DNA of 64,000 nt from Oikopleura dioica (Eukaryota > Animalia > Chordata), in contig OU015566.1 of NCBI GenBank assembly GCA_907165135.1, positions 11,842,001 through 11,906,000 of the forward strand. The letters run 5' to 3'. Shown here in pieces: positions 6,007-63,790 of the stretch (position 1 is the first letter of the stretch; each line of letters opens with the position of its first letter). A program made the position numbers and the translations under genes. The notes under the pieces were generated by a model that worked only from the letters and a program-made list of their open reading frames with translations, did no database searches and was not told where the DNA came from.

Positions 6007-6430
6007 ATGAACATTGACCGTTCCACAAGAAATGACCAGATAATCAGGATCGCAGATCCACCTTCCTACGAAGTCTCTATGTCTACAGCTCAGTGGACAT
6101 CAGGTAAACTTAAGCTAGCAAAACCAAATTGACTTAAAATAAGTCCCGATTCCGCTTTCTCCAAGCCAGTCCTATACTCAACCTGCAACTCAACAACGAT
6201 TATCTCAGAACAAAAGAAATTTTATGAGAGAATTATGGGCTAGTATTTATTCGCTACTTAGATATGCAGCTGCTTATGTTCTTTGCTTATTTTTTCTGCT
6301 GATCTTTGCAGCAATTCCAGTTATCTTTATTCACCTCGTAACTTCCAAAATAAGTTCATTTTTTAGTTTCTTATTTATTCTTGTGTACTGTGCTTTTATT
6401 TTTCGCATAATTTATGATTGCACAAAATAA
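6007..6430 (+). CDS. Small PPxY-motif protein with C-terminal hydrophobic segments
   Basis: MNIDRSTRNDQIIRIADPPSYEVSMSTAQWTS, then an intron (gtaaac...aag), then VPIP...LRYAAAYVLCLFFLLIFAAIPVIFIHL. Paralogous to 25131-25517. Confidence 0.55.
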
Positions 6431-37569: not shown

Positions 37570-37651
37570 GACTGGATGGCCGAGCGGTCTAAGGCGTTGG
37601 ATTAAGGCTCCAATCTCTTCGGGGGCGTGGGTTCGAATCCCACTTCAGTCA
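37570..37651 (+). tRNA. trnL-AAG: tRNA-Leu (anticodon AAG)
   Basis: Acceptor stem GACTGGA/TTCAGTC, D-loop TGGCCGAGCGGTCTAAGG, anticodon arm TTGGA-TTAAGGC-TCCAA, long variable arm, T-loop GGTTCGAATCC. Confidence 0.97.
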
Positions 37652-46911: not shown

Positions 46912-49900
46912 TTACTCTTCGTTCGTCTTAGCATCCCAAACAAAGAGAGTTTGATCGTCTCCACCGGCGGAGATGATAAATTTGTCGTCGCAAGTCCAGC
47001 AAATTGATGTCACGGCTTCTCCGTGGCCGTAATGCTAGAATAATAAATGAGCGAATGAAGAAAGATTCGTGAGCAAGAATGATTCTTAGGATTATTTGTA
47101 GGATGAGAATGAAATGCGAAAATTCTGACGAATAATAATTTTTCATTAGCTACAAACTAAAAACTGATTGCGCTTTGTATTAGAAACATACCCAGTTGAC
47201 TTTTGCCTTTTGTTTCTTAATATTTTTTATATTATGTCTTGAATTAATAGACCCTTACCATCATTCCTCCCATAGTTTTCGGCGGGAATTCCTGGAGTTG
47301 AATGGATCCTTGATCATCCCCCATCGCGACATATTTTCCTGAAGTCGATACAGTGGCGCAAGTTGAGTTGAAAGGAGCGACAAGGGGATGGCGCGGGCAG
47401 TGGAATGTTTGCCATTTGAGCTGAGGAATTCGAGGATCTTCGAGGTCGAGAATTTCTGCCGATGGAACGATGCAAATGACGAAATCGTCATTGTCCAAAG
47501 CTACAGCAGCGAATCTAGAGAGCAAAAATAGGATAAGAACAATGAGCACTAGACGTACTTTTCGTTCTCTGAGAAGTCGACTGAAGTGACAGGAGCAGCG
47601 AGGCCTTGGGCAAAGCCTTCTTTAGCAAGTTTGAACTTGTTTTCCTGGTCGATTGTGAAAAAGATCAGGTTGTTATCTTGTCCTACTGCCACTTTGTTTC
47701 CGATGTTCTAAAGACTGATCAACAAAACGTTTTCTATAAGCAAGAACCTGGATAAAAGTGATGGGTTTTCCAGTATCTCTTCTCTTCGATAAAATTCGTT
47801 CGTTACATAACACGAGAATTTCCCCATTCTCTAGGCCGACGCAAATGAGCGCCTCGTCGTCAATATCCTGAAGATAAATTAAGCGCTCGTTAGCTTGAGC
47901 AAACACGGAAAACAAGGATTCTAAACGAATGAGTGACTTACTGTCAAGTTCAAATATCGAACAGCGGTCACACCAGCGGCAAAGTGGACTTTTTGAAGAA
48001 GCATCTTTGATTCAACATCCCAGACGCGCAAGGACCCGTCAGATGAGCCGGAAGCGATGAGATTTGCTTGAGTTGGATTGGCACAGACGCAGTTTACTCG
48101 TATTGGGATCTTAGATTCGTTAGACTCCCTCGTCCCCTAAGGTCACTTGCTTATCTAGATCGAGCTTTGCTCGGTCGCCGCCGTGTATTTCTCTCCATTC
48201 GGTAATTCACGCAGTTCGTGAATTAACCTCTATTTTACTCCAGCTCGAAATACAGACGTCAAAGATACTTTACTCGTTTTCTTCACTCGTCCAGATATAG
48301 AGAGCAGGCAAACTACGCTAGAAGTGGGAGATTCAGCAGAAGCTAGGATCCCTTCAGTGGTATCAGAGTAGTCCCGTTGGAGAAAAGGTAAATTTTCCGC
48401 CATCGACAACCGAAGTTTCGCAACTTGGACGCTGATTGGCCGTCAGCGGAGTCGAGGGGAACCGAATCACCAACCGCCACCGCGCCGCCGGAGAAACTCC
48501 ACTCAGAGAATTTTCCGCGCCGCACCACACCAACACCACCCCGAGCGAGCGCCACCACACGAGCGCCACCACGACCCACGCGCCGAAAGTCGCGCCCACG
48601 CAACCACGCACGCACGCCGGGGAAAACCTAAAATACTCAGAAAAACAGAATTCTTTCGCCACTTTTCACCAAAAATCGAGAGAAGTTTACGAAGAATCGA
48701 CCCTTGGACCAGACCTTGAAATTTCGACAATCGCTGGACAGAGAAATCGTCGGGCGTTTGCGCAAAAGGCACCTCAGCTCATCATATTGCGACTTTTAGT
48801 CGCAGTATTTTCTGAGGGCCTGAAAGGTAATCCAAGGCCCATAAACCCTTACTGCCGATATATTTCGAGCTATGGCGGCGAACAAATCACTGCTAGAAAC
48901 CGTCACCGAAATAAGAAGCATAAACGATCGAGTAAACTACCTCGAAGAACAAGTGCGAAATGACGAATCACTTAAGCCAAGCCTAGAGCCCTTGATCACA
49001 GAAAGCAGAGTAAAATTAGAACAGCTCAGTACAACGCTTCTTACCTGCGAGCTCGATCAAGGAAAAGAATCTACGAATGCTACAATGAGAGAAGAAGCAT
49101 GGGTGGCCACTACCTGGTCTCGTCACGTCCAAGACTTGCCGAAGCTGGACGCCGCATGCAACACATCTTTCAACACCTTCTTGGGCAGAGCCGACATTTA
49201 TCACCGCGCCTACGTCCGCGACAGACCTTCACGTGAACAGCCTTTCATCGCAGCAGTGTACAGCCACTTCGACTTGAACATCGAACGCTCACTTGGAACC
49301 GAATTTCTGAATTGTCAAGACTGGAAATCGGCCAAGGCGCTGCTAGAGAAATCATTCGCCGCGAAGAGTCACTACTTACTGAAGCTAAGCGAAGTTTTCG
49401 ACGTCGAATACGACCATTCGAAGCCGTTTGCACACTACACCGCCAACGTCTTGCAAAAGATGAACGAGGCGAAGCAAGCGACTTTGAACTCTTACCGACA
49501 AGAGAAGTCAGCCGACGCCGGGGTCGATGAAATATTCGACATATTCTCGACGATGATGCTGTACTTGAATCTTAGGAAAGAAGAACCAGACGTTTTCAAC
49601 GCAATCCTTCCAAGCCTATCAAAAGTTTACGATATCAACGAACTCTGCCGTCTCGCCCAATCCACAAGACAGAATCGAGTTGACAGCGCGACCGTCTCCC
49701 AGCACTTCAACAGAAATAAGAACAAAAAGAAGAAGAATGCTAAGCGCGCCAGCACCGATTCTAAGGATGGGAAAGACGATAAACAACCAGAATCCAAGAA
49801 GATTAATACGACTAAGAACGTCGAAGATTTCCAACCATTCGATGTTCACTTTTACACAGTGAAGAAGAAGCGACCAGGAAAGGCTTATTTCGCTTCGGCT

Positions 49901-52900
49901 ACCATCATTACGGGCTCTAAAAGTTTTGACGTATCGATGGAAGTCGACAGCGGAGCCGAGTCCTCCTGTCTGTCCGCTGCTTACGTTCCCGACAAATTTC
50001 TCCAGATGCTGAAGCCCTGCCCCTTCAAGGTCACCGGTTTCAGCCCAAATATCCCCGCCGAGCAGCCGAGGGGTATCCTTCCCTGCCGCTTATCATTCAA
50101 TGGTGGCCCTGCATTCTCCTTGAATCTCACCATCATGCCAGGCAGTAAATACCCAAGTCTACTGGGCCGCGATATACTAGAGAATGCGATGACGGACAGC
50201 TTCACAGTCGACAATAAGAATCGTACTCTCTCATTTTGCTACAACGAAGCCTTCACACAAACTGAGACTCAAGTGGTGAAGCTGGACGGAGTGAAGCGGA
50301 CCAAAATCAAGAAATACTTGACGACTAGATCAGCGGTCAAAGACAGCGATCGGTCCCGCACTCAACCACCACGAGAAGTCCCAAAGCTGGACGCGCCGAA
50401 CAAGAACGCAGCCAGGTGCCCCATTCAGCTAGCGAAGCAAAAACTCGGAATAACCCTACCAGCAGACGCAGACCCGGGGCAAAAGAAGATGGTCGCCGAG
50501 CTGTGTTTGGAATTCGACGACAGATTCGGCTGCGACGGTCAAAAAATGGGTGAATTCCCGTTCGAGATCGAAATCCCGACTGATGGTACGAGTCGAAACA
50601 TCAGTCAACACCCGATTCCGCAAGCTTTTCATGGTCAGGTCAGCGATCACATCTCCGAACTGCTCGAAACGAAAATAATAGAAGAGATCAAAGACCAGAA
50701 AGGGTTTAACAGCCCGGTATTGCCTATTCCTAAGAAATCTGGGGAAATGCGCTTCTGCATCAACTACAAAAACAGCCTGAACAAATGCCTCTCCGACAAA
50801 TCCGACCCTTACCATCTCCCAAGCATGGAGGATACGATTGCGAACATTGGACCGGGCAATAAGTTTTTCGCCACAGTTGATCTACGAAGTGGATATTGGC
50901 AGTGCCCTGTAAAGAAAAGCGACAGGTACAAGACTTCCTTCCAGTGGGGTGGGAAATCTTACGCCTTCTGCAGACTACCATTCGGTTATCGATGCTCGGG
51001 GAATATATTCTCGCGCGTCGTAAACACAATTCTCGACTCAAGCCCCACCAGGAAAAAGATGCTTTCTTATATCGATGACATAGTGTGTTTTGGGAAGACT
51101 TTCAGCTGCTATTACAACACTCTCCGAAACCTATTCATCGCGCTCCGCAAGTTTAACGCTAAACTCAAGGGCGAAAAGTGCTCTTTCCTACAATCCGAAG
51201 CTCACTTTTGGGCCGAATCATCAACGAAGATGGAATCAAACCGGACCCTGCGCAAGTCTCCGCTCTTCGTCAGATGAAACCCCCACGCTCCCAAAAGGAG
51301 TTAGCTTCATTAATCGGGTCATTGAATTGGATCCGAGGTTTTCTAGAAACGAAAATGGGCGAAGCTATTTCATCCGGTTGCTTCTCGAGCAGAATGAAGC
51401 CCATAAACGATGTTCGAAATTCGGCGAACGAAACAAATTGTTTCAAGTGGACCAAAGAAGCGGATTTGGCGCTCAAGGAAATTCAACGACGACTCTCCGA
51501 GACTCCAGTCATAAGTTTTCCTAACTTTGACGAGTCTTTTCATCTCTACACAGACGCGAGCCTGTACGCAGCGGGTGGCGTCCTGCTACAAGAGTATGGC
51601 GGGAGAGTGCACCTAGTAAGCGCGATTTCCCACACCTTCAACAAAGCTGAAAGAAAATGGAACACTTCAGAAAAGGAAATGTTTAGCATTGTCTGGTGCT
51701 GCGAGCGACTGGAAAAGCTCCTGAAAGGTAGATTCTTTCAGATTCACACAGACCACCGATCTTTGATCTTCCTACACAAAAAGAAGTTCAAGAATTCTAA
51801 AATAAGCCGATGGCAAAGCCGATTGGAAGAATTCGATTTTCACATTGTCTACATCAAGGGATCAGAAAATCAATTCGCCGACTTTATGAGCCGCAGACCT
51901 GGCGAGGACGACAAATCACTTGGATACGACTCTGAGTTTCCCGTTGGTCGCGAGTACGAAATCGACAAGAATTCACCAGTACGTGTCTTCGTCCCTTTCT
52001 GGAACGAAAATCAGTTTCCGGAGAAAATCACTTTATCAGAGGTGAAGATACATAAGGTAAACGTCAAGGCTATCGCGGCGCCAATGGAGATTCCGTTGGT
52101 GTCAGCGAATTATAATAACATTCTGGACTATCAAAGGGAGGACTCTGCTCTGAGTGCAATCATCACTTTTCTGGAATCTGGTAAGGAGCCACTGGACATA
52201 AAATCGCTGGTGAAGGACTCCGACCACCGACAATCGTCTCTACTCAAGATGGAAAAAGCTCTGTTCCTGGATAACACTACCGGGTGCTTGATGTGTCAAT
52301 TCAAATCTGGCGCGCGGGCGGTGGTACCGGAAGCGGTAAAAAGTCACTTTCTCTTTCTAGCTCACGACTTGTCCGGTCATCTGGGCGAGCCGCGGACTTT
52401 AGAGCGATTAGAGGACGTTTGGTGGCCTTCATTTCAAGACGATGTTTCTAACTACGTCCACAGCTGCGTCCCTTGCCTACGCAGAAAAGGATCTGCTGGA
52501 ACTCGTACCAAACCGCCACTTGGAACCCTTCGTCGTGGAAAAACAGCTGGCGAATCGATTCAGATCGATTTCGCTTGTATGCCTCCCGCTGGCGGATTCA
52601 AGTATTATTTGGTGGTGGCGGACACTTTCTCTCGCTACACTTGGTGCATTCCGACGCGGTCCGACACTGCTATCTGCGCTGCAAAAGCGCTCATCTACAA
52701 GGTCTTCCTTCCCATGGATTTCTTGCCGAAACATCTACACAGTGACAGAGGTACCCACTTCTGCGCAAGCGTGATTGACGAAATGTGTAAGCTTAACCAG
52801 ATAAAACATACAATAAGTACCGCATTTCACCCTCAATCAAACGCTTTCGCAGAAAGAGCGAATCGGACTATCAAAAACAGTCTATTCTGCATGGTCAACT

Positions 52901-55900
52901 CATCTTCCGGTCGAAAAACTTGGGCCGACTGCGTTCCCCACGTGATGCGCGCGCTCAATAGTGTGAAAAACAAAAGCACGAAAATTTCACCGCGAGAAGT
53001 TTGGTTTGGCCGAAAAAGTACTTTCACCCACTCTACTGGCGCAGAAATGACAGCGGAAACACCTCAGGTGTTTGGTCTCAATGTGGGAGCTTTAGCGAAA
53101 TCGGCGGAAGCCATTGTGAAAACTGCGATGGAAGCTGCTGACCGAGCCATGGAGCACAGGCTGAAAAACGAGCCTAAGCCGAGACCAATCCCCGCTGGCG
53201 CTGTCGTGTACATTAAGCGAGAAAACCTGACCGACGCTAAAAGCAAGAAGGAACGCTGGGTAGGTCCCCTGAAAGCCGTTTCGAGCAACGACTGGGTCGT
53301 CATGGTCGAAGATAAAAAAGGACAACGTGATTTCATCCATCGAGAACACGTGGTTCACGCCGCAGAACGAAATCACGACTTACGCTGGATTGATTACTAC
53401 GAGGCCGAGTACGTATTCCCACATTTAACCGAAATCGTTAAGTCGAAAGTCCCACAAAAATCGCCTGTTCCTACTTCCAAACCGATGGAAAAGTCCGGGT
53501 CGAAGTCGCATGGGGGGAGGAAATCTTCTCAGGTCGCGTCGACTCCGATGGTTGCTATGGAAAAACCGCCAAGATCATCTCTATCACCTATTTTGGAAAG
53601 TAGACGCCGATTGGACATGGAAAATCTGGGAGATACAACCGCTACATCTATTTTGGACTCGTCGGTAGCTCCAGCCGAGCCGTCAGATCGCTGGTACTCT
53701 GGTGGTACTCTTTATGAAACTGCCGAGGACATGTCAGCTGATGCTACAGTGATTTCGGAGGTTGCTGCGCCCGACAATAGCCATATGTCAGTCGATAAAC
53801 AAAATTCAACAGTAGTTGAGGGCTCAGCAACTGAAAACAGCAAGAAAAGAACCCGTCCAAAGTCTTCACCAGATCGTCAATACTCAGCCGGCGCCGATCC
53901 GAATGCGACTTTAACCGAAGTTGGAGCAGCTCATCTCCCGAAACATACAAAACGAGCACACCGTGAAACGAGGCCCGTCGAACCTCTAAACATCGGCACA
54001 AACTCGGGTCAGTCATACGACTAAGCGCAAGTACTGCCCCACTCAGGTCCCCTATTCATCGACCGGGGCCTGAAAAGGTACGGAAATTATCACAGTTTAC
54101 CGTCGCCGACGTATTTTGAGTTCTTCTACATGTGCAGCTACTCCTTCATGTCATCACCGCTCGGACATCACGAAAACTTCGCATCTGATTCAAGCTTTTT
54201 CCCAAAAAAGGGTTTTTTAACGCGAATCAGACTGCCTCGACGTTTCGAACCTGCCATGTTACTCATCTTACGCTTATACTCCTGCAAAAATCACACACTT
54301 TGGCCTTAGAGGACGTTTCAGTCTCATGGGGGGTATTGGGATCTTAGATTCGTTAGACTCCCTCGTCCCCTAAGGTCACTTGCTTATCTAGATCGAGCTT
54401 TGCTCGGTCGCCGCCGTGTATTTCTCTCCATTCGGTAATTCACGCAGTTCGTGAATTAACCTCTATTTTACTCCAGCTCGAAATACAGACGTCAAAGATA
54501 CTTTACTCGTTTTCTTCACTCGTCCAGATATAGAGAGCAGGCAAACTACGCTAGAAGTGGGAGATTCAGCAGAAGCTAGGATCCCTTCACTCGTCCTGGC
54601 GCAAAGTGGCCCATTGTCATCATCGAAACTTATTATTTTTATTTTCGAAAGAAAAAAAACTCTCTTACCTTCGCTTGTTTTTTCGTTTATCACAGCAACG
54701 GCGTTGTCTTTTGTTCCAACAAGGATCTTTCCTTTGACTCGGGCAACAGCTTTGACAGTTACGCTTTCTTTAGCGTCGTTCTCGATTGGAACATGGAAGC
54801 TCTTGCATTTCTTCATCTGACTATCCCAAAGCTTAATTGCGCCGGAGGAAGACTTTTCTTTGCCACCGGTCACGATCAATCCGTCTTTCAAAGTCGTGAA
54901 CATGGCAAAAACGGGACCATTGTGAGCTCGTTCGATGATTCTTTGCGCGTTTGAACCTTGCCAGACGATGACAGCTCCAGTTGCCATTCCAGTAAAAGTC
55001 ATATCGTCAGTGCCAAACGCCAAGCTCAAACATGTGCCGACTTGATTGAGGTTCAGACAACCTGGCTGGGCTTTTTTACAAAGCAAGACAGAACCAGCAA
55101 TTTGCCAGAAAAATAGAGCGCGTTCACCGACAGTCACGAATTTCGAATCAGAATCTGGTCGGAAATCTGCTTGGAAAATTTGACGAGGACCGGAGCATTT
55201 CGATGCAACTTTCTGGCCAGTTTGCCAGCGGTAAACGGAAACTGTGTGTTCGGAATCGAGTGACGCGGCGAGGATGAGCTTTCCAGATCCAGAGAAAGAG
55301 ACTGCGGATACTCCTCCTGAGAGACCAGAGATGATCGAAAGCGTCTCGGTAGTTGACTCATTGTCGTCGATATTCCAGACATGAACGCTTCCTCCAAGTT
55401 GACCAGTAGCGACTACAGATCTATAGTTTGGATGTTTATTCTGCGTCAGGCAAAGAATATCGTCGGAATGTTGGTCATAGAAGAACTGCTCTTTGGTTTC
55501 CATATCTTGGACGATCGCAACGCCAGCAGCGTGGTAAATGATCCGCGAAATGGTATCAGGGCCAGTAGCAGAGAGTTGAAAGTCCAGATTACAGCGAGCA
55601 TCATATCCTCGATAGCCGAAAACATGCTTGAGTGCGAGAGTGTCGATTTTATTGTCATCTTCTGAGTTGAAATTCGCCATGAAGTTGAGCTCGTCGCCTC
55701 CACGGGCAAAATGCGTCCTAGACTCTATTGGCTCTAGTTCGATTTCAGCTGCGTCGCCCTTGTTACGTCGCTGTTCTCGTCGGTTATCAGAGTTTGTCTG
55801 TCTGTCGTAGTCGATCTTCATCTCTTCGTCGACGTCGCTATCGAAGAAATCATCATCGTCGTCAGTATCTTCGTCATCCGACTCGTGGACTTCCTTGCTT

Positions 55901-58900
55901 TCAGGTCGTTGCCAGATCATCACGGAGGCGTCTAATCCACCAGTGGAAACAAGCTGGCTATCACCTGCTGTAAAGCGAACTTTTGTAATGTGCGAAGAAT
56001 GGCCGGTGTATTTCTTGCATTTCGCGTGCTTTTCCATCGAAGGATACTTGAACAGCTTCACCATTCCAAAATCATCACCAGTAGCGATGATGTTCATATC
56101 TCGATCAGTGCAGGCAGTGTTAATGTCTGTAACATTCGTATATGCAGGCCAGATTCCCTCAACTTCTGGACCTAGAACAGACGTCCACAGATGCCAGGAC
56201 ATCTTCGCAATGGTTGCTTTATCAGGAGTGATTCGCTTGCAGCTTGGAATTTCATAGAACAATCGCTCGCTTGCGCCGGAGTTTATTTGAATGATTTTGC
56301 CATCGGTAGTCCAATCTACGTGAGTAATGTAGCTAGAGCTTCCCTTGCAAATTCCGATTCGTTTCTTCTTCTGGATCGAGTAAACATCGACGAAGTTTTC
56401 GTGACTGCCAACAGCGACGAATCTGCCAAAAGGATCAAACTTGACATCCGAAATATTCTGCTTTCTATGTTGGAATTCTTTCACAATTTCCAGTGATTCT
56501 GCCTCAAGAAGCATGACTGAACCATCAAGGAAGCCAGCAACAATGATAGTTCCGTCGGGAGAGTAAGTAAGAGCTCGTCCAGCTTTGCCAAGCTCTTTTG
56601 CTGCGGTCATCTTTTGGTTTTCCACATCCCATACTCGAATGCTCTTATCGTCAGAAATCGTAGCAACGACTTGTTCCTCTGGATGAGTGGCCAAGCCCCA
56701 AACTTCGCCCTGCGCGTGTCCTTGGACGAGAACTTTGATCGGTCCTTCCTTGTCAAGTTCCATCAGCTCACCGTTCTTTGTACCAGCGATAAGGAAGTCG
56801 TCTCCCATGATGATTGTTCGAATCGATGGATTATCCGCAATTAGAGGACCATGCGAGTCTTCGGAGACATTTTCCGCTTTGACCTCGTAATCTCGTTGCT
56901 TCTCGGTCATGTCCTGGTCCCAGAGATAAATCCATCCGTTCTTTCCTCCGGAGAGAAAACCCTCTGGCAACTTGCAAAGCGTAAACACAGGGCCTTCATG
57001 TGAGTCGACGACTCGCTGGAGTTGATTTCCCTGCCAGCAGTAAATCTTTCCATTTTGCCCTCCTGAATAGAAGATGCCCTCGTCTTCGCCATGAGTGCCG
57101 CAGAGATGTGAAGTTGTTTCTCCGTTTGAGCCGCAGATACCTCGCTTTCCTTCAGCGCTAGCGCCAACAATCTTCCAGAACTTGATATGCTTGACTCCAG
57201 TGGACACAAATTTCAACGGATCATGTGGATCAGAGAGGACGCAGAAGACCTTGTCTTTCGACCCGTTGACCTTGGAAACGCATTCTCCTCGACGCCAGTC
57301 CCAAACAGCTATAACATGCTCGTCCGAGAGACCCACTGACAATAGTCGTTTTCCGTCAGAGGTAAAATCCAATGCACATACGCCCCGTTCGTGAACGCCG
57401 TTGAAGATCGAGATGGTCTGCATCGTGAGAGCATCCCAAACATGAATGGCTGGGTTACGCCCGATTTGACCAGTGGCGACAATGTCCTTTAGAAATGGTT
57501 AAAAAAGTGTGTTGAAGAAGAGTAGTCTGAATTGGGTTACCGCTCCGCGCGGCCTCGCTACATTGATCTCACATCGCTGGTCACCGGCTAATCCCAATCC
57601 TACTCGACACAACTGTCCCTCCCGAAGGAGATCGTCCAGGAAATGTGACGAGCGGAGAAACAATTTCTGGTTCCCGGTAGTGTCTTCCGACACCAGTCCC
57701 ATCACGAGACTAACCAGCCAGGGTGAACCTGACTGGTGACCTCTCAGACCTTCCCCGGGTGCAAATAGCCCCCGCCAGCAAGCTTACTTCGACGGCAATG
57801 ACGGTTTATTTCGCGGTTTATAAATTGAATATCGCCGGGAGCTAGTAAGCTGGGGTGTTATGGTCCCCATTTCCATCAAAGTTGGGGATGCGAAATTTGG
57901 GGTTAATTTGAAAACTGAGCACCATAACACCACCCCCACCAAGAAATCCCCCGATTTTCCTTTATAAGCCCCAAAATTGACCCTTCTCCCCCATCAAGGC
58001 CGGAAGGTTCGCTGTCCGGGGCCGTTTCGGCGGCACCGGGGGAAAGTCCCCAGTCCCGTGGCGGAGAGCGCCCATCCCGAATCTGGGATGAACGCTGCGT
58101 AGAGCCGAGCAAAGGCAGCGGTGACGGACTTGTCCGTAGCTGACGGTGAGGTAGCGTACTCGACACGAGCGAAAGTTATGCGAACAGCCCGAAAATGGTT
58201 TGGGTGAACTCAATGGGGCTTACTCTTCGGACTTGTATCTTTTTTACCATTTTCCTTGGTTGGGTGGAGAGTCAGGGATAGAATATCATCTGTGTGTCCA
58301 TAATAAAATCTTTGCGAATGCTCCTCTCGGTTGTAAACGATTCCAAGAGCTGCGGAGTGAAAGACGATTTCGCCAGCTTGAGTGTATTTGACGTTCTCTC
58401 GGCAATCGTGGCCTCTGTAACCTGCACACCATTTCAAAGTCAGACTGTTCTCTGGTGCACTTGGGCGCTTTTGGGAAACTCCTTCAGTTTTGGTGCTCTC
58501 GGACTTGAGTTGAATAATGTCTTCGTTGTACAGATCACGGGAATAAGTTTCTTCCATTTCCGCTTCCAGATCTGAGTCTACGTCGCGATCTGGATCGGAT
58601 GAATCCGAATCCTCTGAATTAGAATCGATACCAGAGTTCGAAGCAATGTCATCATCGTCGCCTTCGACAACTTCTACACCTTCGTCAATGCTTTCAGAGT
58701 CACCGACGAGCTTCCATTGAAAGAGAGCATGATCGGCGCCGCCAGTTGTAAGTAGATAATTTCCATCTAGAGTCCAGCGCACATTCGTAACATGCGCAGA
58801 GTGACCATTGTACTTTCTGAACTTGGCGCCACGCTTGGAAGCTGGGTAACGGAAGAGCTTCACGAGACCGAAGTCGTCTCCGGTCGCGATTAGGTCGTTT

Positions 58901-60489
58901 TCGCCACGCTTGTCTACCGAGTTGACATCGTTCAATTGAGAGTACTTCGGAAAAACTCCATCCACGTTTTCACCAACGACGCCTGTCGTCGTCGCCCATT
59001 CCAAGCCTCCAAGAACTTCTGAATCAGTCACGTGTTCACCACTAGCATCGTAAATTAATCGCTCTCCCGCTCCGTCACAAGCAGCGATGTGAGAAGAATC
59101 AGCTGACCAGTCAAGTTGAGTGATAAACGAGCTAGCCTTCGCACCAACAGCCGTATCAGCGTAATCATCGGCGACGGTGTAAATGTCGATCTTGTTGTCG
59201 TTCGATCCGACCGCGAGGAATTCACCAGATGGCGAAAATGCGCAACAATGACGGGCTTGTTTTCGATCATGAATGGCTTTCACCTCGCTCATGTCCTCCG
59301 CGTTGTAGATTTTCAGCGAGCCATCTTTGAAACCAACGGCGATGGTGGAACCATCAGGTGACCAGCAACAGCTTCGAGCTTCAGCCTCAGCGTAAGCGAC
59401 CAGACTTAGCTCGTGAGCTTCCAAATCCCAAACGCGAATTGATTTATCATCAGAAGCTGTCACCGCTTTCATTTCTTCCGGATGCGAGGCGAGGCCCCAA
59501 AGTTCTCCTTCCGAATGCGCTCGAGTAATCCAGGTGATTTCTTCATGATCAGCGTTGAGAACAAGAACATCAGATTGAGATGTTCCTACGAGAATTTCAC
59601 CATCGTCGTTGATGCTCAAAGATCGAATGTAACTAGTCGCTAGTTCGGCTTCTAGCTCTCCAAGTTCGATCTTCTTCGTGATTTCCAACTCGTTGTCGAG
59701 CATAATGATGCAACCAAATTTTCCACCAGCGATGTATCCGTCAGCGTAGGAGTGAATTGAGTAAATTGGTCCAGGCGCAGCGTTCGGAAGGGATTTGACG
59801 AGGTTATTTCCTTCCCATGAGTAGATGGATCCGTCCATCGTTCCGGACAAGACTCGGCCAGTTTCGTTTTCACGAGTGACACAAAGAACAGTTTGAAGGG
59901 ACCCGTTGTCTCCAAAGACACCTCGTTTCGACTTGAGCGTGTTTCCCATCAAGTTCCAGACCTTGATATGCTTCACGCCGACTGTATAAAAGCTTCCATC
60001 GTTGTTTGGCGTGAAGCAAGAGTCGAAAATGCGATCCGAATGGCCGGAAACGATACAGAGTTGCCTCGCCGATTCCCAGTCCCAAATTGCAACGAGACTT
60101 TTTGGGTCAATCCCAACTGAGAGAACTCTACTCCCGCATGTAGAAAAACCAACGCTTCCGACACCGTGAGTGTGGGTTCCTTCTTTCTTGAGAACAGATT
60201 TCGTCTTCATCGTCGTGGTATCCCAAATGTTTATTTGGGGATCTTTTCCAGTTTCGCCAGATGCAGCTAGCTTCTTGTTTGGATGCATTGAAAGGCAGAG
60301 AATATCATCATTGTGATGAAGGTAAAAAGCCTGCTTTTGATGATCTTGAGAAAAGACGATTCCAGTCGCTGCAACGAAGTAGACAATGTGGCCTTCTTCA
60401 TTGAAATGGCAGTTCGACCGACACTGGTGGCCTCGGTATCCGTAGACCCAGTTAAGCCGGAGGGATTGATCTGGTACTTTCTTACTCAT
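46912..60489 (-). CDS. EML6: Echinoderm microtubule-associated protein-like 5/6 (triple HELP/WD40); one exon interrupted by an LTR retrotransposon
   Basis: Three HELP motifs (LRLNWVYGYRG, LTLKWCAGYRG, LALKHVFGYRG), WD40 arrays, and GDDFGLVKLF/GDDFGMVKLF...GHSAHVT/GHSSHIT motifs. Removing the element restores MTMGHFAPGR-VNCVCANP. The protein ends ...GGDDQTLFVWDAKTNEE*. Confidence 0.93.
48101..48356 (+). repeat. 5' LTR (256 bp)
   Basis: TATTGGGATC...GGATCCCTTCA. No difference from the 3' LTR found by eye. Confidence 0.97.
48358..48368 (+). other. Primer-binding site, tRNA-iMet-like (TGGTATCAGAG)
   Basis: Begins after a 1-nt spacer following the 5' LTR and starts with TGG (complement of CCA). 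Confidence 0.8.
48872..54024 (+). CDS. Gag-Pol polyprotein split by a 1-nt frameshift within RT
   Basis: Protease VDSGA, RT LPFG...YIDD, RNase H TDAS...E...TDH, integrase H-H-C-C plus D-D-E (IDF, SDRG, AERAN). Adding one T to the run at 51206-51209 joins ORF 48872-51277 to ORF 51178-54024 (...EAHF-LGRII...). Confidence 0.9.
54334..54589 (+). repeat. 3' LTR (256 bp)
   Basis: Same sequence as 48101-48356, preceded by GGGGGG (54328-54333). Confidence 0.97.
57501..57506 (-). terminator. Pol III terminator of RNase P RNA
   Basis: T6 on the minus strand just after P1. It is also within the pyrimidine-rich region of the host intron acceptor. Confidence 0.8.
57511..57793 (-). ncRNA. RPPH1: RNase P RNA (eukaryotic nuclear)
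   Basis: Minus strand carries CR-I GGGAAGGTCTGAGA (57755-57742), a CR-II-like CCAGAAA, a UUCG-capped hairpin, CR-IV GTGAGATCAATG and CR-V AACCCAATTCAGACTACTCT (57538-57519). CR-I and CR-V are identical to human H1 RNA motifs as I recall them. P1 helix is GTCGAAG/CTTCAAC, followed by a T6 terminator. Confidence 0.95.
57818..57967. promoter_or_regulatory. Bidirectional type-3-like Pol III promoter: two divergent PSE-like + TATA modules
   Basis: ACCATAACACC starts at 57921 (+) and 57864 (-). TTTATAA starts at 57961 (+) and 57824 (-). The offset is exactly 40 nt in both modules, and the RNA 5' ends lie about 31-32 nt past the TATA start. Confidence 0.8.
57993..58239 (+). ncRNA. RMRP: RNase MRP RNA
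   Basis: CR-I GGGGAAAGTCCCC (GAAAGTCCCC at 58042-58051), GARAR-type pentaloop hairpin GGCG-GAGAG-CGCC (58060-58072), CR-IV-like AAGTTATGCG, and CR-V CAATGGGGCTTACTCT (58211-58226) able to pair with CR-I. P1 is CAAG.CCGG/TCGG.CTTG, followed by a T6 terminator. Confidence 0.9.
58240..58245 (+). terminator. Pol III terminator of RNase MRP RNA
   Basis: T6 immediately after the P1 3' strand. Confidence 0.8.
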
Positions 60490-60668: not shown

Positions 60669-63600
60669 CTATCCTTTTAGCTTTGGCCATCGCTGTTTGA
60701 TGTGATCAGCTGATTTGGCAGTAAGCTTCATGCCAGCGGCAGGATGAGCTCCTGGCATAACCTTTCGCATGTACACTTTTTGCGCGAAATCCTCGCTGCA
60801 GAAGAGAATTTCGCAGTCGTATTCTTTCGACGGTTTCCATGTTCTTTCATAAAGCGCCATTCCGACTTCTCCTGGCTCCTAAAACGAGTTATAAAAACGA
60901 AAAGAAAATTGAGAACTTACGATATCCCAATACATTCCACGGACGCTTTCTGACGATTTATCAACAAAGCTGATTTTTACCAATTGAGGCGATGAATTTT
61001 CCGGATCATCCGTCTCGAAGAAATCACCTGCTTTCAAATTGTCGAAGTCCAAATGCGCCTGGTACTTCGGCTTTGCTGCTTTCTCCGCTTTAGCCTTCTC
61101 ATTTGCTTCTTGTTTAATTTTCTTTTTCTCTTCAGAAAGGCGTTTTTCTTTTCGTTTTTCTTCGTCAGTCTTGACTTTTCTCTTCTTCTTCGGAGGGCTT
61201 TTCGCTTCTTTCGCAGCCTTTTCTGCTTCTCTTGCCGCTTTCATCGCTCTTTTCTTTTCCTCCCTTTCGATTTCCTTCGCTCGACGCTTTTGTTCTTTGA
61301 TGATTTGTTTTTCTTCGAATTTTTTCAAGTCCTGCTCGAGTTTTCTCTTCTTCTGAAGCTCACTCTTTGGCCCGGGCTTTCTCATTTCCTCCCTCTTCGG
61401 ATCATCCTTTCTCGGTCTTCCAACAAATTTCGGCTCTTCATCTTCGCCCATCATTTGAATCACCTTTTCTCTCTTTCTGAACTCTTTTTCTTTCTGCTCG
61501 ATGATCTTCTTATCGACACCTTGTTCACGAGCAGCTTCGAGTTCTTTGCGCTCTTGTTCAAGCTCTTCAAGTCGAGTTTCTCGCTCCATTTCAGTTTGAA
61601 CTTTATCTCTTTTTCGGGGGTAAACATTGCTGAAGACATAGATGAGAGCTTAATGAAAGAGAGATAGAGAAAAACTCTTCCAGTTTTCCTTATTTTTAGC
61701 CCCGCCCTGGTAATTTTAATTGCCCGTTGGATATTGCTCTTGACGGTGTTATCGATTTTCTTCGTCCAAGGATCATCAGAATTGAAGGATCCAATTCCCT
61801 CATCCTCGTTGCTTTCACTTTCCGCTTCACTTTCAGACTCAGCGCGCAACTTATCCTTTCTGACGTGCCACTGGCCCACTTGTCCTTTTTGGATTACTCT
61901 GCTTTCTACGTCAACGACAAACGGTCTTCCGCGTTTTATTTTCGTCGAGTTGGCGATCTCCACTAGATCCTGTAAACCAATTTGTTAAAATAATCAAATT
62001 TGACCTTTGCCGTTTAAAATTACCTTTGAGGGGTAGATACTCTTGTTTCCCTTGGGAAAGAAGCTTTGTTTCTCAACAAGGTGTTTCTGATTGAAAGTTT
62101 CGACGGTTTGATGCTTCCGCACAACAATTTTTCGTTCTTCTTTGCTCGGGCTCACTTGCTCATCCTCAGGTCTATCAATAGTAGCCACTGCACATCTAGC
62201 AACGCGGGATGTCTGGGCTGCATGGCGAATTCGCTGTCTTCGATTGTAGATGCTATTTTCATCGTCTAAACTCGGCACACCGGCGATGATCCGTTCCGTT
62301 TCTCTCGCCCTGTCCTGTAAAAGAAAATATTTACAAAGTGAATCAGATCGGTCTTATTTACGATTATACGCTGTCTTGTGCGGTCGACGATATCTGCCGG
62401 ATTATTGACGCACTTGTAGTAGATCATATCCGCATCAGGAGGGGTACACTCGTGAACTCGTTGGATCGTGGCTTTGTACGCGTCAAACGTCATTCGTAGA
62501 TTTTGCACGGCGAAGGAAAGCGACTCGTCGAAGTCGCCCTTATTGAGTTTTTTTTAAAGTTTTGACCGTGAAAAATACCGATATTTCGTCGACAACATTC
62601 AGCAGCGCTGGACTAACTTCGTCAGAATTAATCGCGTGTTGCCAAACATCTGATGTTCCAAGGAGCTTTTGTGTATGAGTTGTTGGAAATTCAAAAGCTC
62701 TGGAGGGAACAATATCAGAAATAAACATGAAATTCGAGTGTTTACCCAAGATGGTGTAATTGCCAAAAGACCGCATAAGTGTCCCTCAAACCGTATTCAT
62801 GGAAGCTTTCCATCGCAAATTCGTAAAGAATTTTGTATTGAGCAGGAGTCATTCGAATGCCGCGCTTGGTTTTGTTCGTCTGAGTTGTATAAAGAGCCAA
62901 AAGCATGTAGATACAGGTTGATCTCACCAAATGATCCGCCTAAATCGACATTCAAATGGGGTTTGTGCCACAAACTTTGTTGGAAAAACGGGCGGTGTTT
63001 TCGAGAACTGGGTGTTTGATTTAGCAAAAATTCTCTAGATGAGCCGGCGTGCTGTTGTCTTTTGCCAGAATTTGATCAGAGAGAGGTACGCCTGCTCCTT
63101 AAAGCAGGGTCCAGAAAGAGTGATTAAGAGGTAAGATTATTGCAAAAAGAACTTTTGATAACGCAAATTTTAGAGCATTGGCAACATGGACACAATGCAG
63201 AGCTGAAGCTCTTCTTCACTCCACCGATCGAGGAGTTCTCGCACTATCTCGACGGAGTCAAGTCCAAAAGGGGATTGGCACACGATTCGATTTCGTAAAA
63301 AACGAAGTCGTTGAAAATAACTGGGCGACATATCCAATCACCACGAACTGTACAACAGTTACAGCCTCGTATTCAGCTACTTTCTGCCAATAAAAGTTGG
63401 CTGCGCCAAATACAACCCTTATATTCAGACCCTTCCGAAAAGCTCTTTGTAGAGTTCTTTGGAAGATTTCTTGTCACGTCATTTCTTGCAGGCTATACTT
63501 ACATCCTTTAGCACTAGAAACTGAACGACGCAGGAATAGCAAGCATCAATAAAGTCAGCCTTGTCAGACTCACTCGTTCGTCCGTCAAAAATCTTGTACA

Positions 63601-63790
63601 TTTCCAAATCCTGCCACATGTGCGTGAATGCTAAAATATCTCAATTAAAAGCACGAATATCAAGCCTTTTCTTACTGGAATAGGTTCCCGCTCGATCTTC
63701 TCCTTCATCCTTGATTCTATGAATGAGAAAATCAAAGTCGGTCACAAATCCGGCCGCCTTTTTTCCGGATTCCATCGATTCGACCGTCTA
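60669..63790 (-). CDS. Large hypothetical multi-exon nuclear protein with a K/E-rich region and a possible C-terminal BAH-like domain; likely 5'-incomplete
   Basis: Chain of minus-strand open segments, including KRGRP, a K/E-rich coiled coil (60879-61589) and GDFFETD...VRGMYW...YERTW...EILFCS, which resembles a BAH pattern (inference). Confidence 0.45.

What the first reader, a model, noticed from the sequence alone, without database searches (positions are those of the whole stretch)
57485..58257. The P/MRP cassette looks like an inserted unit that created a GA-AG intron (TIR-like ends plus 5-bp direct repeat)
Seen: TCCTT occurs at 57485-57489 and 58253-58257 (AAG|GA at both junctions on the gene strand). 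Inside these are inverted ends AAATGGT(T)AAAAAAG at 57493-57507 and 58239-58252 that contain the two Pol III terminators. Keeping the conserved WD frame LHPTK|DIVATGQ requires a non-canonical GA donor at 58254 and the AG at 57487. Inference: the cassette moved as a mobile unit, or arose by inverted duplication, and the target-site duplication supplied both splice sites, i.e. intron gain carrying essential ncRNA genes.
Basis: partly seen in the sequence, partly recalled or inferred. Interest (0 to 1): 0.8.

Follow-up and report, generated by a model that had tools for sequence, protein, structure and literature searches.

The report
RNase P/MRP gene cassette created an intron
In the tiny tunicate Oikopleura dioica, the only genes for the RNase P and RNase MRP RNAs sit head-to-head and fill a species-specific GA-AG intron of a microtubule-protein gene; relatives without the intron show that the cassette was inserted into coding sequence, and a short duplication now supplies both splice sites.

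Summary
Window 57487-58254 (minus strand) is a 768-nt phase-0 intron of an EML5/6-like gene. It consists almost entirely of the genome's only RNase P RNA and RNase MRP RNA genes. These lie head-to-head, each with a U6-type PSE/TATA promoter and a T-run terminator.

The same cassette intron is present in four O. dioica-type lineages, including the Bergen reference. All four have a GA donor, an AG acceptor, a 5-6 bp direct repeat and complementary intron ends.

Five more distant larvacean relatives read straight through HPTK-DIVA(T/S)GQ. The two whose DNA was read carry a single copy of the repeat. Goby, amphioxus and sea cucumber have no intron here; their ancestral intron lies 21 nt downstream. 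A tree places one gain on the O. dioica stem.

The transposon reading is not supported. The terminal words are not repeated in the genome, and the ends are unlike the window's hAT MITEs. The two arms differ between lineages yet stay complementary, which points to a selected RNA closing stem.

Splicing at K|D rests on inference: synonymous-only change in the flanking codons, and the Bergen gene model. No junction reads were obtained.

The scan had already noted this stretch (s1-336576). It also noted hAT MITEs elsewhere in this genome whose target duplication builds GA-AG introns (s1-330331, s1-354853).

Verdict: a new variant of a known kind.

The parts
58255..60489 (-). Upstream coding exon of the EML5/6-like host gene. 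It runs from the ATG (MSKKVPDQ...) to the Lys codon AAG, ending ...LTLHPTK.
   Evidence: One ORF. Pfam HELP, Beta-prop_EML and Beta-prop_EML_2 with E down to 1e-103. Same N-terminus as the Bergen protein P0123.
58253..58257 (-). Upstream copy of the direct repeat (gene strand AAGGA). It holds the 5' splice site AAG|GA.
   Evidence: Conserved as AAAG|GA in L011, L015 and L016. Fits the O. dioica GA-donor consensus AG|GAA (PMC7072748).
57487..58254 (-). 768-nt phase-0 GA...AG intron, which is the inserted cassette plus one repeat copy.
   Evidence: Absent from L005 and L006-L010. The Bergen gene model splices K|D.
58239..58252 (-). 5' arm of the terminal inverted repeat / closing stem. It contains the complement of the MRP terminator.
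   Evidence: the repeat finder I7/I9. The whole-intron MFE pairs intron nt 3-16 with nt 748-762, with mean pair probability 0.90 over the end-to-end pairs.
57994..58235 (+). RNase MRP RNA gene, antisense to the host, with T6 terminator at 58240-58245.
   Evidence: RF00030 at 122 bits, full length. The only copy in the genome.
57794..57993 (.). Shared mirror-image Pol III type-3 promoter. P TATA 57817-57824; P PSE 57854-57865; MRP PSE 57920-57931; MRP TATA 57961-57968.
   Evidence: ACCATAAC at about -70 and TTTATAA at about -30, as upstream of all six U6 genes of this genome. These blocks are conserved in L011 while the spacer between them is not alignable.
57511..57793 (-). Nuclear RNase P RNA gene, same strand as the host, with terminator at 57501-57506 (T6 on the gene strand).
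   Evidence: RF00009 at 115.7 bits, full length. The only copy in the genome.
57493..57507 (-). 3' arm of the terminal inverted repeat / closing stem. It contains the P terminator, which doubles as a pyrimidine tract before the acceptor.
57485..57489 (-). Downstream copy of the direct repeat (AAGGA). It holds the 3' splice site AAAG|GA.
   Evidence: The empty sites carry it once: AGCAAGGATATT in L006, ACAAAAGACATT in L005.
54466..57486 (-). Downstream coding stretch, starting DIVATGQIGRNP... Its last roughly 40-45 codons are intron or retrotransposon sequence read through, not exon.
   Evidence: One ORF. Pfam Beta-prop_EML from profile position 23 onward. The first 10 codons differ from L011 only at synonymous sites.

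Best explanation
In the common ancestor of the O. dioica cryptic species, a DNA segment of about 760 bp was inserted into the coding sequence of the EML5/6-like gene, between a Lys and an Asp codon. This happened after the split from other Oikopleura-like larvaceans. The segment carried complete, divergently transcribed RNase P RNA and RNase MRP RNA genes, each with its own PSE+TATA Pol III promoter and T-run terminator.

I take the most likely route to be capture of a copy of the cassette at a staggered double-strand break. Fill-in of the break duplicated 5-8 bp of target (...AAAGGA...). The original locus was lost afterwards.

The O. dioica spliceosome accepts AG|GAA donors. Each copy of the duplication therefore contains a usable splice site at the same offset: AAG|GA as donor and AAG|GA as acceptor. 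Splicing removes the insert plus one repeat copy and restores the reading frame exactly.

The two outward-facing terminators (an A-run and a T-run in the host transcript) and the adjoining TGGT/ACCA core pair with each other. This closes the 768-nt intron into a stem that brings the two splice sites within a few nucleotides of each other. The pairing has been kept by compensatory change.

Shown: the presence/absence pattern, the exactness of the insertion, the conserved GA/AG, the repeat, the complementary ends, the Pol III promoter motifs, and single-copy status.

Inferred: the one-step origin, the break-repair route, actual use of the GA-AG sites, and a role of the stem in splicing.
For: - Rfam finds full-length P and MRP genes, each the only copy in the 64.3-Mb genome.
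- The host is EML5/6-like.
- The same cassette intron (766-772 nt) occurs in L011, L015 (Bergen OdB3) and L016.
- P0038/L005, P0002/L006-L010, P0023, P0136 and P0137 run through the site as one ORF. L005 and L006 carry a single copy of the repeat.
- The tree is (outgroups,((L006,P0023),(L005,(window,(Bergen,L011,L016))))). Support is 96-100 on every fork except the open three-way fork among Bergen, L011 and L016.
- Amphioxus, sea cucumber and a goby have an intron at ATGQ^VG, 21 nt downstream, and none at K^D.
- All four lineages have GA...AG. The 20 flanking codons differ only at synonymous sites.
- The Bergen protein reads HPTKDIVATGQ.
- This is the only intron in the first 1684 codons of the Bergen gene. 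The five others are 41-183 nt and GT-AG.
- The closing stem appears in the MFE of all four lineages, with pair probabilities 0.77-0.90.
- The PSE and TATA are shared with the U6 genes.
- Literature: GA-AG is common in O. dioica, with an AG|GAA donor. New Oikopleura introns are mostly GA-AG, and staggered breaks leave 4-12 bp exon repeats at the far end of new introns (PMC4202315).
Against: - No junction reads were obtained. The public RNA runs offered laid almost nothing on the stretch.
- The earlier location of the cassette is unknown. P and MRP could not be located in the intron-less relatives.
- Part of the direct repeat is forced by codons and by the splice consensus.
- A terminal inverted repeat plus a short duplication is also the signature of a DNA transposon.
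- The four cassette-bearing lineages are close kin, so the compensatory changes amount to few independent events.
- An earlier short intron at the same site cannot be strictly excluded.
Confidence: 0.55

Rival explanations
1. Two steps. A short new intron arose first at K^D on the O. dioica stem. The P/MRP cassette later landed inside it, and deletions trimmed the intron down to the cassette plus its splice signals. On this view the direct repeat simply reflects the AG|GA(A) donor and AG|G acceptor consensus.
For: O. dioica gains introns often, and new ones are mostly GA-AG. Its donor consensus AG|GAA, together with the Lys/Asp codons, already gives AGGA on both sides. Between 11 and 24 nt have clearly been lost or gained next to both terminators between lineages.
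Against: It needs two rare events at one site on one branch, in a gene with no other intron across 5 kb. In every lineage almost nothing lies outside the cassette: 9-22 nt at the 5' end and 14-40 nt at the 3' end, much of it forming the stem arms. No cassette-free intron was seen in any of the relatives sampled.
Confidence: 0.17
2. The cassette was the cargo of a cut-and-paste DNA transposon. The inverted ends are its TIRs and the 5-8 bp repeat is its target-site duplication, so this would be an introner-type event in the strict sense.
For: Inverted ends lie directly inside a short direct repeat. In Bergen the arms are a perfect 12-mer, TGTGGTTTTATT/AATAAAACCACA, and the repeat matches at 7 of 8 positions (ACAAAGGA/AAAAAGGA). 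This genome does hold MITEs in exons. Other notes of the scan report TSD-built GA-AG introns.
Against: The cassette is single copy. The terminal words occur 26 times against 17 for the control, and 9 against 21, so there is no repeat family. The termini do not match the CAGGG ends of the hAT MITEs in this window. The unconstrained spacer inside the cassette is already unalignable between lineages, so neutral TIRs should have decayed. Instead the arms changed on both sides and stayed complementary.
Confidence: 0.12
3. The intron and its cassette are ancestral, and the other larvaceans lost them precisely. A variant holds that the intron is the old ATGQ^VG intron, slid by 21 nt.
For: Larvaceans lose introns massively. 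The old intron lies only 7 codons away.
Against: At least two or three independent exact losses would be needed on the tree. Each would require the essential P and MRP genes to move elsewhere. All three outgroups lack an intron at K^D.
Confidence: 0.03

Closest known systems
Introners: transposon-generated introns in Micromonas and Aureococcus (Huff, Zilberman & Roy 2016, Nature 538:533). It appears in the reference list of PMC13326754, seen. I recall the details from memory; the paper itself is not held.
   Same: An insertion into coding sequence is removed exactly because the duplicated target sequence contributes splice-site bases. It has inverted ends and a short flanking repeat.
   Different: Introners are families of many near-identical non-coding copies. 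This is a single insert with no family in the genome, and its cargo is two functional, essential genes.
New introns from repair of staggered double-strand breaks in Daphnia (PMC4202315; Li et al. 2009)
   Same: A lineage-specific intron whose far end repeats 4-12 bp of the adjacent exon. Here the repeat is 5-6 bp (up to 7 of 8 in Bergen).
   Different: Daphnia neointrons are short, carry filler of unknown origin and are almost all GT-AG. This one is GA-AG, fixed across cryptic species, and its filler is a complete pair of Pol III genes.
Intron-embedded RNase P RNA of insects and crustaceans (PMC6797745)
   Same: The only RNase P RNA gene lies in sense orientation inside an intron of a protein-coding gene. 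That intron is long for its genome and has unusual splice sites. Flanking intron sequences are predicted to pair.
   Different: The arthropod gene lost its Pol III promoter and is processed from the Pol II intron. Here PSE, TATA and terminator are kept and conserved. MRP RNA lies in the same intron on the other strand. The event is independent and much younger.
Non-canonical GA-AG introns of O. dioica (Denoeud et al. 2010 as cited in PMC4202315 and PMC8008620; PMC7072748)
   Same: AG|GAA donor and AG acceptor, in a newly gained intron.
   Different: The median O. dioica intron is 49 nt. This one is 768 nt and contains genes.
Pairing between intron ends that aids splicing of long yeast introns (Goguel & Rosbash 1993; Libri et al. 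1995; recalled from memory, not checked here)
   Same: Complementary segments near the 5' splice site and near the 3' end shorten the effective distance between them.
   Different: Here the pairing partly uses the terminators of two embedded genes. Its function is untested.

Membership tests
Nuclear RNase P RNA (Rfam RF00009) | Full-length match to the covariance model above the gathering score, including the conserved GGGAAGGUCUGAGA and AACCCAAUUCAGACUACUCU strands | tested here: met
   115.7 bits against a cut-off of 28, model positions 1-301. 108.6-112.1 bits in L011, L015 and L016.
RNase MRP RNA (Rfam RF00030) | Full-length match above the gathering score | tested here: met
   122 bits against a cut-off of 50, model positions 1-266. 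120-125 bits in the three other lineages.
Type-3 (upstream) Pol III promoter genes, U6-like | PSE at about -55 to -75, TATA box at about -30, and a T-run terminator at the 3' end | tested here: met
   ACCATAAC and TTTATAA sit at the same distances as in six U6 genes of the same genome. Both are conserved in L011. The terminators are T6 runs.
Type-3 (upstream) Pol III promoter genes, U6-like | Actual transcription by Pol III with mature ends | not testable with these tools
   Oligo-dT RNA runs only. Reads on the MRP part were few and came from diverged kin.
Spliceosomal GA-AG intron of O. dioica | Donor AG|GAA, acceptor AG, and removal that restores the conserved frame | tested here: met
   AAG|GAA(A/T) and AAAG|GA in four lineages. 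The joined frame gives HPTK-DIVATGQ, as in the intron-less relatives.
Spliceosomal GA-AG intron of O. dioica | Junction seen in RNA | tested here: inconclusive
   No joints in four runs with near-zero depth. A search for short transcript-derived ORFs across the junction found only other species. The Bergen annotation uses the junction.
Introner / transposon-derived intron | Many similar copies in the genome | tested here: not met
   Single copy. The terminal words are not enriched.
Introner / transposon-derived intron | Inverted termini directly inside a target-site duplication that contributes splice-site bases | tested here: met
   Single-copy target in the empty sites.
hAT MITE | 8-bp duplication and CAGGG-type (YARNG) termini | tested here: not met
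   The window's hAT MITEs end in CAGGGGTG... and CAGGGTTC.... The cassette ends in GAAAATGG or GAATGTGG. The repeat matches at 5 of 8 positions in the window and 7 of 8 in Bergen.
Break-repair neointron | Lineage-specific presence with an exact empty site, and a short repeat of the adjacent exon at the opposite intron end | tested here: met
Break-repair neointron | Identified source of the filler DNA | not testable with these tools
One metagenome scan gave only an unrelated P RNA contig, L014.
Arthropod-type intronic RNase P RNA | Loss of the Pol III promoter and dependence on host splicing | tested here: not met
   PSE, TATA and terminator are retained and conserved. Dependence on splicing was not tested.

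The most novel reading that the evidence does not exclude
A complete pair of essential ribozyme-RNA genes behaved as a one-off introner. Its insertion into an exon was tolerated at once for two reasons: the duplicated target AAGGA offers a GA donor and an AG acceptor to a permissive spliceosome, and a head-to-head Pol III pair is self-complementary in the host transcript (A-run against T-run, antisense MRP against sense P). The intron therefore zips itself shut. The stem is now maintained by selection and is needed for splicing. With P RNA in sense orientation, this locus would also be a living example of the transitional state postulated for the origin of the intron-processed RNase P RNA of insects.
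Probability: 0.35. Interest if true: 0.78.

Novelty: new variant of a known kind. Interest (0 to 1): 0.62.

Why it matters
Mechanisms of intron gain are mostly inferred from anonymous filler DNA or from transposon families. Here the inserted DNA is identifiable and functional, and it holds the only copies of two essential genes. The empty site survives in relatives, so the event can be read base by base.

It shows how a relaxed donor rule (GA) widens the set of target duplications that can act as splice-site pairs. It gives a testable case of intron ends kept complementary across cryptic species. It is also a second, independent embedding of RNase P RNA in an intron, this time with its Pol III promoter intact.

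Practically, the public Okinawa gene model at this locus is wrong. It translates pieces of the MRP and P genes.

Tried and rejected
- RNA evidence. Of the runs offered, the four laid put 0-8 reads or 4 short contigs on 56000-60000 and showed no joints. This is uninformative, not negative. Both caps are used.
- A search with part of the Bergen protein (P0123:645-845), looking for transcript-derived ORFs across the junction, returned only other species.
- I never built or searched a joined exon model of my own. Exons were searched separately by reference, and the joined step was left out.
- One metagenome scan for P RNA of relatives gave a single unrelated contig, L014, with no MRP on it.
- Repeat-family tests on AAATGGT(N)AAAAAAG and TGTGGTTTTATT showed no enrichment.
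- A hAT origin was rejected on the termini.
- My guessed coordinates for two earlier MITE notes (L024, L025) showed nothing relevant.
- RNAalifold on the four introns did not report the closing stem, because MAFFT puts the Okinawa 3' end out of register. Single-sequence folds show it in all four.
- Denoeud 2010, Piccinelli 2005 and Huff 2016 are not held. What I say of them is second-hand or from memory.
- Pfam on the small ORFs upstream gave nothing.
- Human and chimpanzee proteins appeared in a hit list. No contig of theirs was fetched or used.

Full report
**What is there.** The window belongs to a 64.3-Mb assembly in 19 contigs. These figures match the Okinawan Oikopleura dioica assembly OKI2018_I69 (PMC8008620). 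A protein of that annotation is in the 90% cluster of the host-gene protein (P0122) and maps onto the window.

Rfam finds a full-length nuclear RNase P RNA at 57793..57511 on the minus strand (115.7 bits). It finds a full-length RNase MRP RNA at 57994..58235 on the plus strand (122 bits). Each is the only copy in the genome.

The 200 bp between them form a mirror-image promoter. ACCATAAC lies at about -70 and TTTATAA at about -30 from each start. The six U6 genes of this genome have the same words at the same distances. Both genes end in a T6 run.

**The host gene.** The minus strand encodes an EML5/6-like protein with HELP motifs and EML beta-propellers. It is read from two very long ORFs. 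These are separated only by 57487-58254.

**The observation.** All the stated words are at the stated coordinates.
- On the gene strand the upstream junction reads ...ACC AAG|GAAAATGGTAAAAAAG.
- The downstream junction reads CTTTTTTAACCATTTCTAAAG|GAC ATT...
- Only the GA...AG cut has an AG acceptor and yields HPTK-DIVATGQ.
- The rival GT (58247/58246) joined to the acceptor ending at 57450 would also be in frame. It would replace twelve conserved residues by two.

**Related DNA.** Searching the downstream exon alone, and then the clusters, led to genomic contigs of relatives.

Three further lineages are about 94-95% identical in protein: L011, L016, and L015, the Bergen reference scaffold FN653038.1. 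All three carry MRP and P in the same place, in introns of 766, 768 and 772 nt.
- All begin with GA and end with AG.
- All have the repeat AAAGGA on both sides.
- The ten codons on each side differ between lineages only at synonymous sites. They are therefore translated in this frame, which argues against the GT alternative as the main form.
- The Bergen protein reads HPTKDIVATGQ.
- In the Bergen gene this is the only intron in the first 1684 codons. The five others are 41-183 nt and GT-AG.

**Empty sites and polarity.** Five more distant larvacean sequences run through the site as one ORF: P0038/L005, P0002/L006-L010, P0023, P0136 and P0137.
- L007 is a Tara metagenome scaffold. These contigs hold neighbouring genes and other small introns, so they are genomic.
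- Their DNA reads AGC AAG GAT ATT (L006) and ACA AAA GAC ATT (L005). The repeat is present once and no coding base is missing or added.
- No P or MRP gene lies on these contigs.

A maximum-likelihood tree of the downstream exon gives (outgroups,((L006,P0023),(L005,(window,(Bergen,L011,L016))))). Support is 96-100 on every fork except the open three-way fork among Bergen, L011 and L016.

Amphioxus, a sea cucumber and a goby have exons running through HP..D..ATGQ. They share a phase-0 intron between Q and V, 21 nt downstream. No larvacean sampled has that intron at this spot.

One gain on the O. dioica stem explains everything. Retention would need several exact losses, each with relocation of two essential genes. 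An ascidian was not tested.

**The ends.** In each of the four lineages, the minimum-free-energy fold of the whole intron pairs nucleotides 3-4 onward with nucleotides ending 5-6 before the acceptor. Pair probabilities are 0.77-0.90. The duplex is better than dinucleotide shuffles: P = 0.021, 0.065, 0.0003 and 0.019.
- The core TGGT/ACCA is constant.
- Next to it, position 4 is A-U in Okinawa and U-A in the others.
- Position 5 is A-U in Okinawa, G-U in L011 and L016, and G-C in Bergen.
- The inner part of the stem is the A6/U6 terminator pair in Okinawa. In Bergen it is UUUUAUU/AAUAAAA, lying outside the terminators.
- The spacer between the two PSEs cannot be aligned between lineages. Neutral inverted repeats should therefore have decayed by now.

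I conclude that the complementarity is selected, most simply because it brings together the splice sites of an intron 15 times the median length (49 nt). This function is an inference. The sample amounts to few independent changes.

The cassette is also self-complementary as a whole in the host transcript: TATA against TATA, PSE against PSE, and antisense MRP 3' end against P 3' end.

**Mobile element?** The cassette is unique. Its terminal words are as rare as reversed controls. Its ends are unlike the CAGGG ends of the hAT MITEs in this window. I therefore prefer capture at a staggered break, which leaves exactly this kind of exon repeat (PMC4202315). A transposon remains a rival.

**What is known.**
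- GA-AG introns are frequent in O. dioica and have an AG|GAA donor (PMC7072748).
- Its new introns are mostly GA-AG (PMC4202315).
- RNase P RNA embedded in an intron is known from insects and crustaceans. There it has lost its Pol III promoter (PMC6797745).
- New here are the cargo (both ribozyme RNA genes, complete and unique), the exact empty sites, and the conserved closing stem.

**Limits.**
- No junction reads were obtained.
- The donor locus is unknown.
- The joined exon model was never searched; exons were searched apart.

Noticed in passing
window 57487-58254; protein P0122 (CAG5107267.1, OKI2018_I69 chr1 g3235): The public Okinawa gene model mis-splices this intron. It reads HPTK-ENGKKDTSPK-TGDQRCEINVARPRGA-DIVATGQ, so 26 extra residues are translated from the antisense MRP 3' end (58254-58225) and from inside the RNase P RNA gene (about 57590-57544). 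The Bergen models P0123 and P0125 have the clean K|D junction.
   Followed up: yes
L002:1503-1540 (G000:C1, about 8943693-8943730): A 38-nt copy of the 3' end of RNase P RNA (GGAGCGATAACCCAATTCAGATTACTCTTCTTCAA..., 2 mismatches) lies on another chromosome. Rfam finds no RNA around it. It is too similar to be an old relic, so it may be a recent captured fragment.
   Followed up: partly
window about 48000-54600 (pol ORF 51178-54024, plus strand): An LTR retrotransposon lies in the 3' part of the same host gene. The downstream ORF runs on past ...NEKTSE into non-homologous sequence. The Okinawa protein model lacks 25 residues (VSMMTMGHFAPGRVNCVCAHPSQPN) that Bergen has. The next exons resume at about 48013. 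This was also noted by the scan (s1-336649).
   Followed up: partly
window about 60675-63775, minus strand; L015:37-2841; L011:4577-4768: In Bergen, the gene directly upstream of the host carries a SNAPC1 domain, a subunit of the factor that binds PSE promoters such as those of the cassette. It is syntenic in the window (tblastn matches at 46-81% identity) and in L011. This is possibly coincidence.
   Followed up: partly
L012:26822/27256, L013:4448, L026 about 6097-6170; P0140, P0141: The old deuterostome intron at ATGQ^VG is absent from every larvacean sampled. Two further larvacean ORFs (P0140, P0141) start or stop at other points nearby, which suggests other lineage-specific introns.
   Followed up: no
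L014:741-1016 (JGI contig Ga0256838_1053496): An RNase P RNA gene of an unknown eukaryote (94.8 bits) has a TATA box at -30 and a palindromic ATTTATGGTTCC...GGAACCATAAAT element upstream. A second TATA faces the other way near the contig end, so this may be another divergent pair.
   Followed up: no
window 57753-57984: A contig from an oligo-dT marine metatranscriptome (X1), 95% identical, covers the promoter spacer inside the intron. It is either unspliced host transcript or DNA carry-over from a related population.
   Followed up: no
window 37570-37651: A long-variable-arm tRNA gene (Rfam tRNA, 57 bits) on the plus strand.
   Followed up: no
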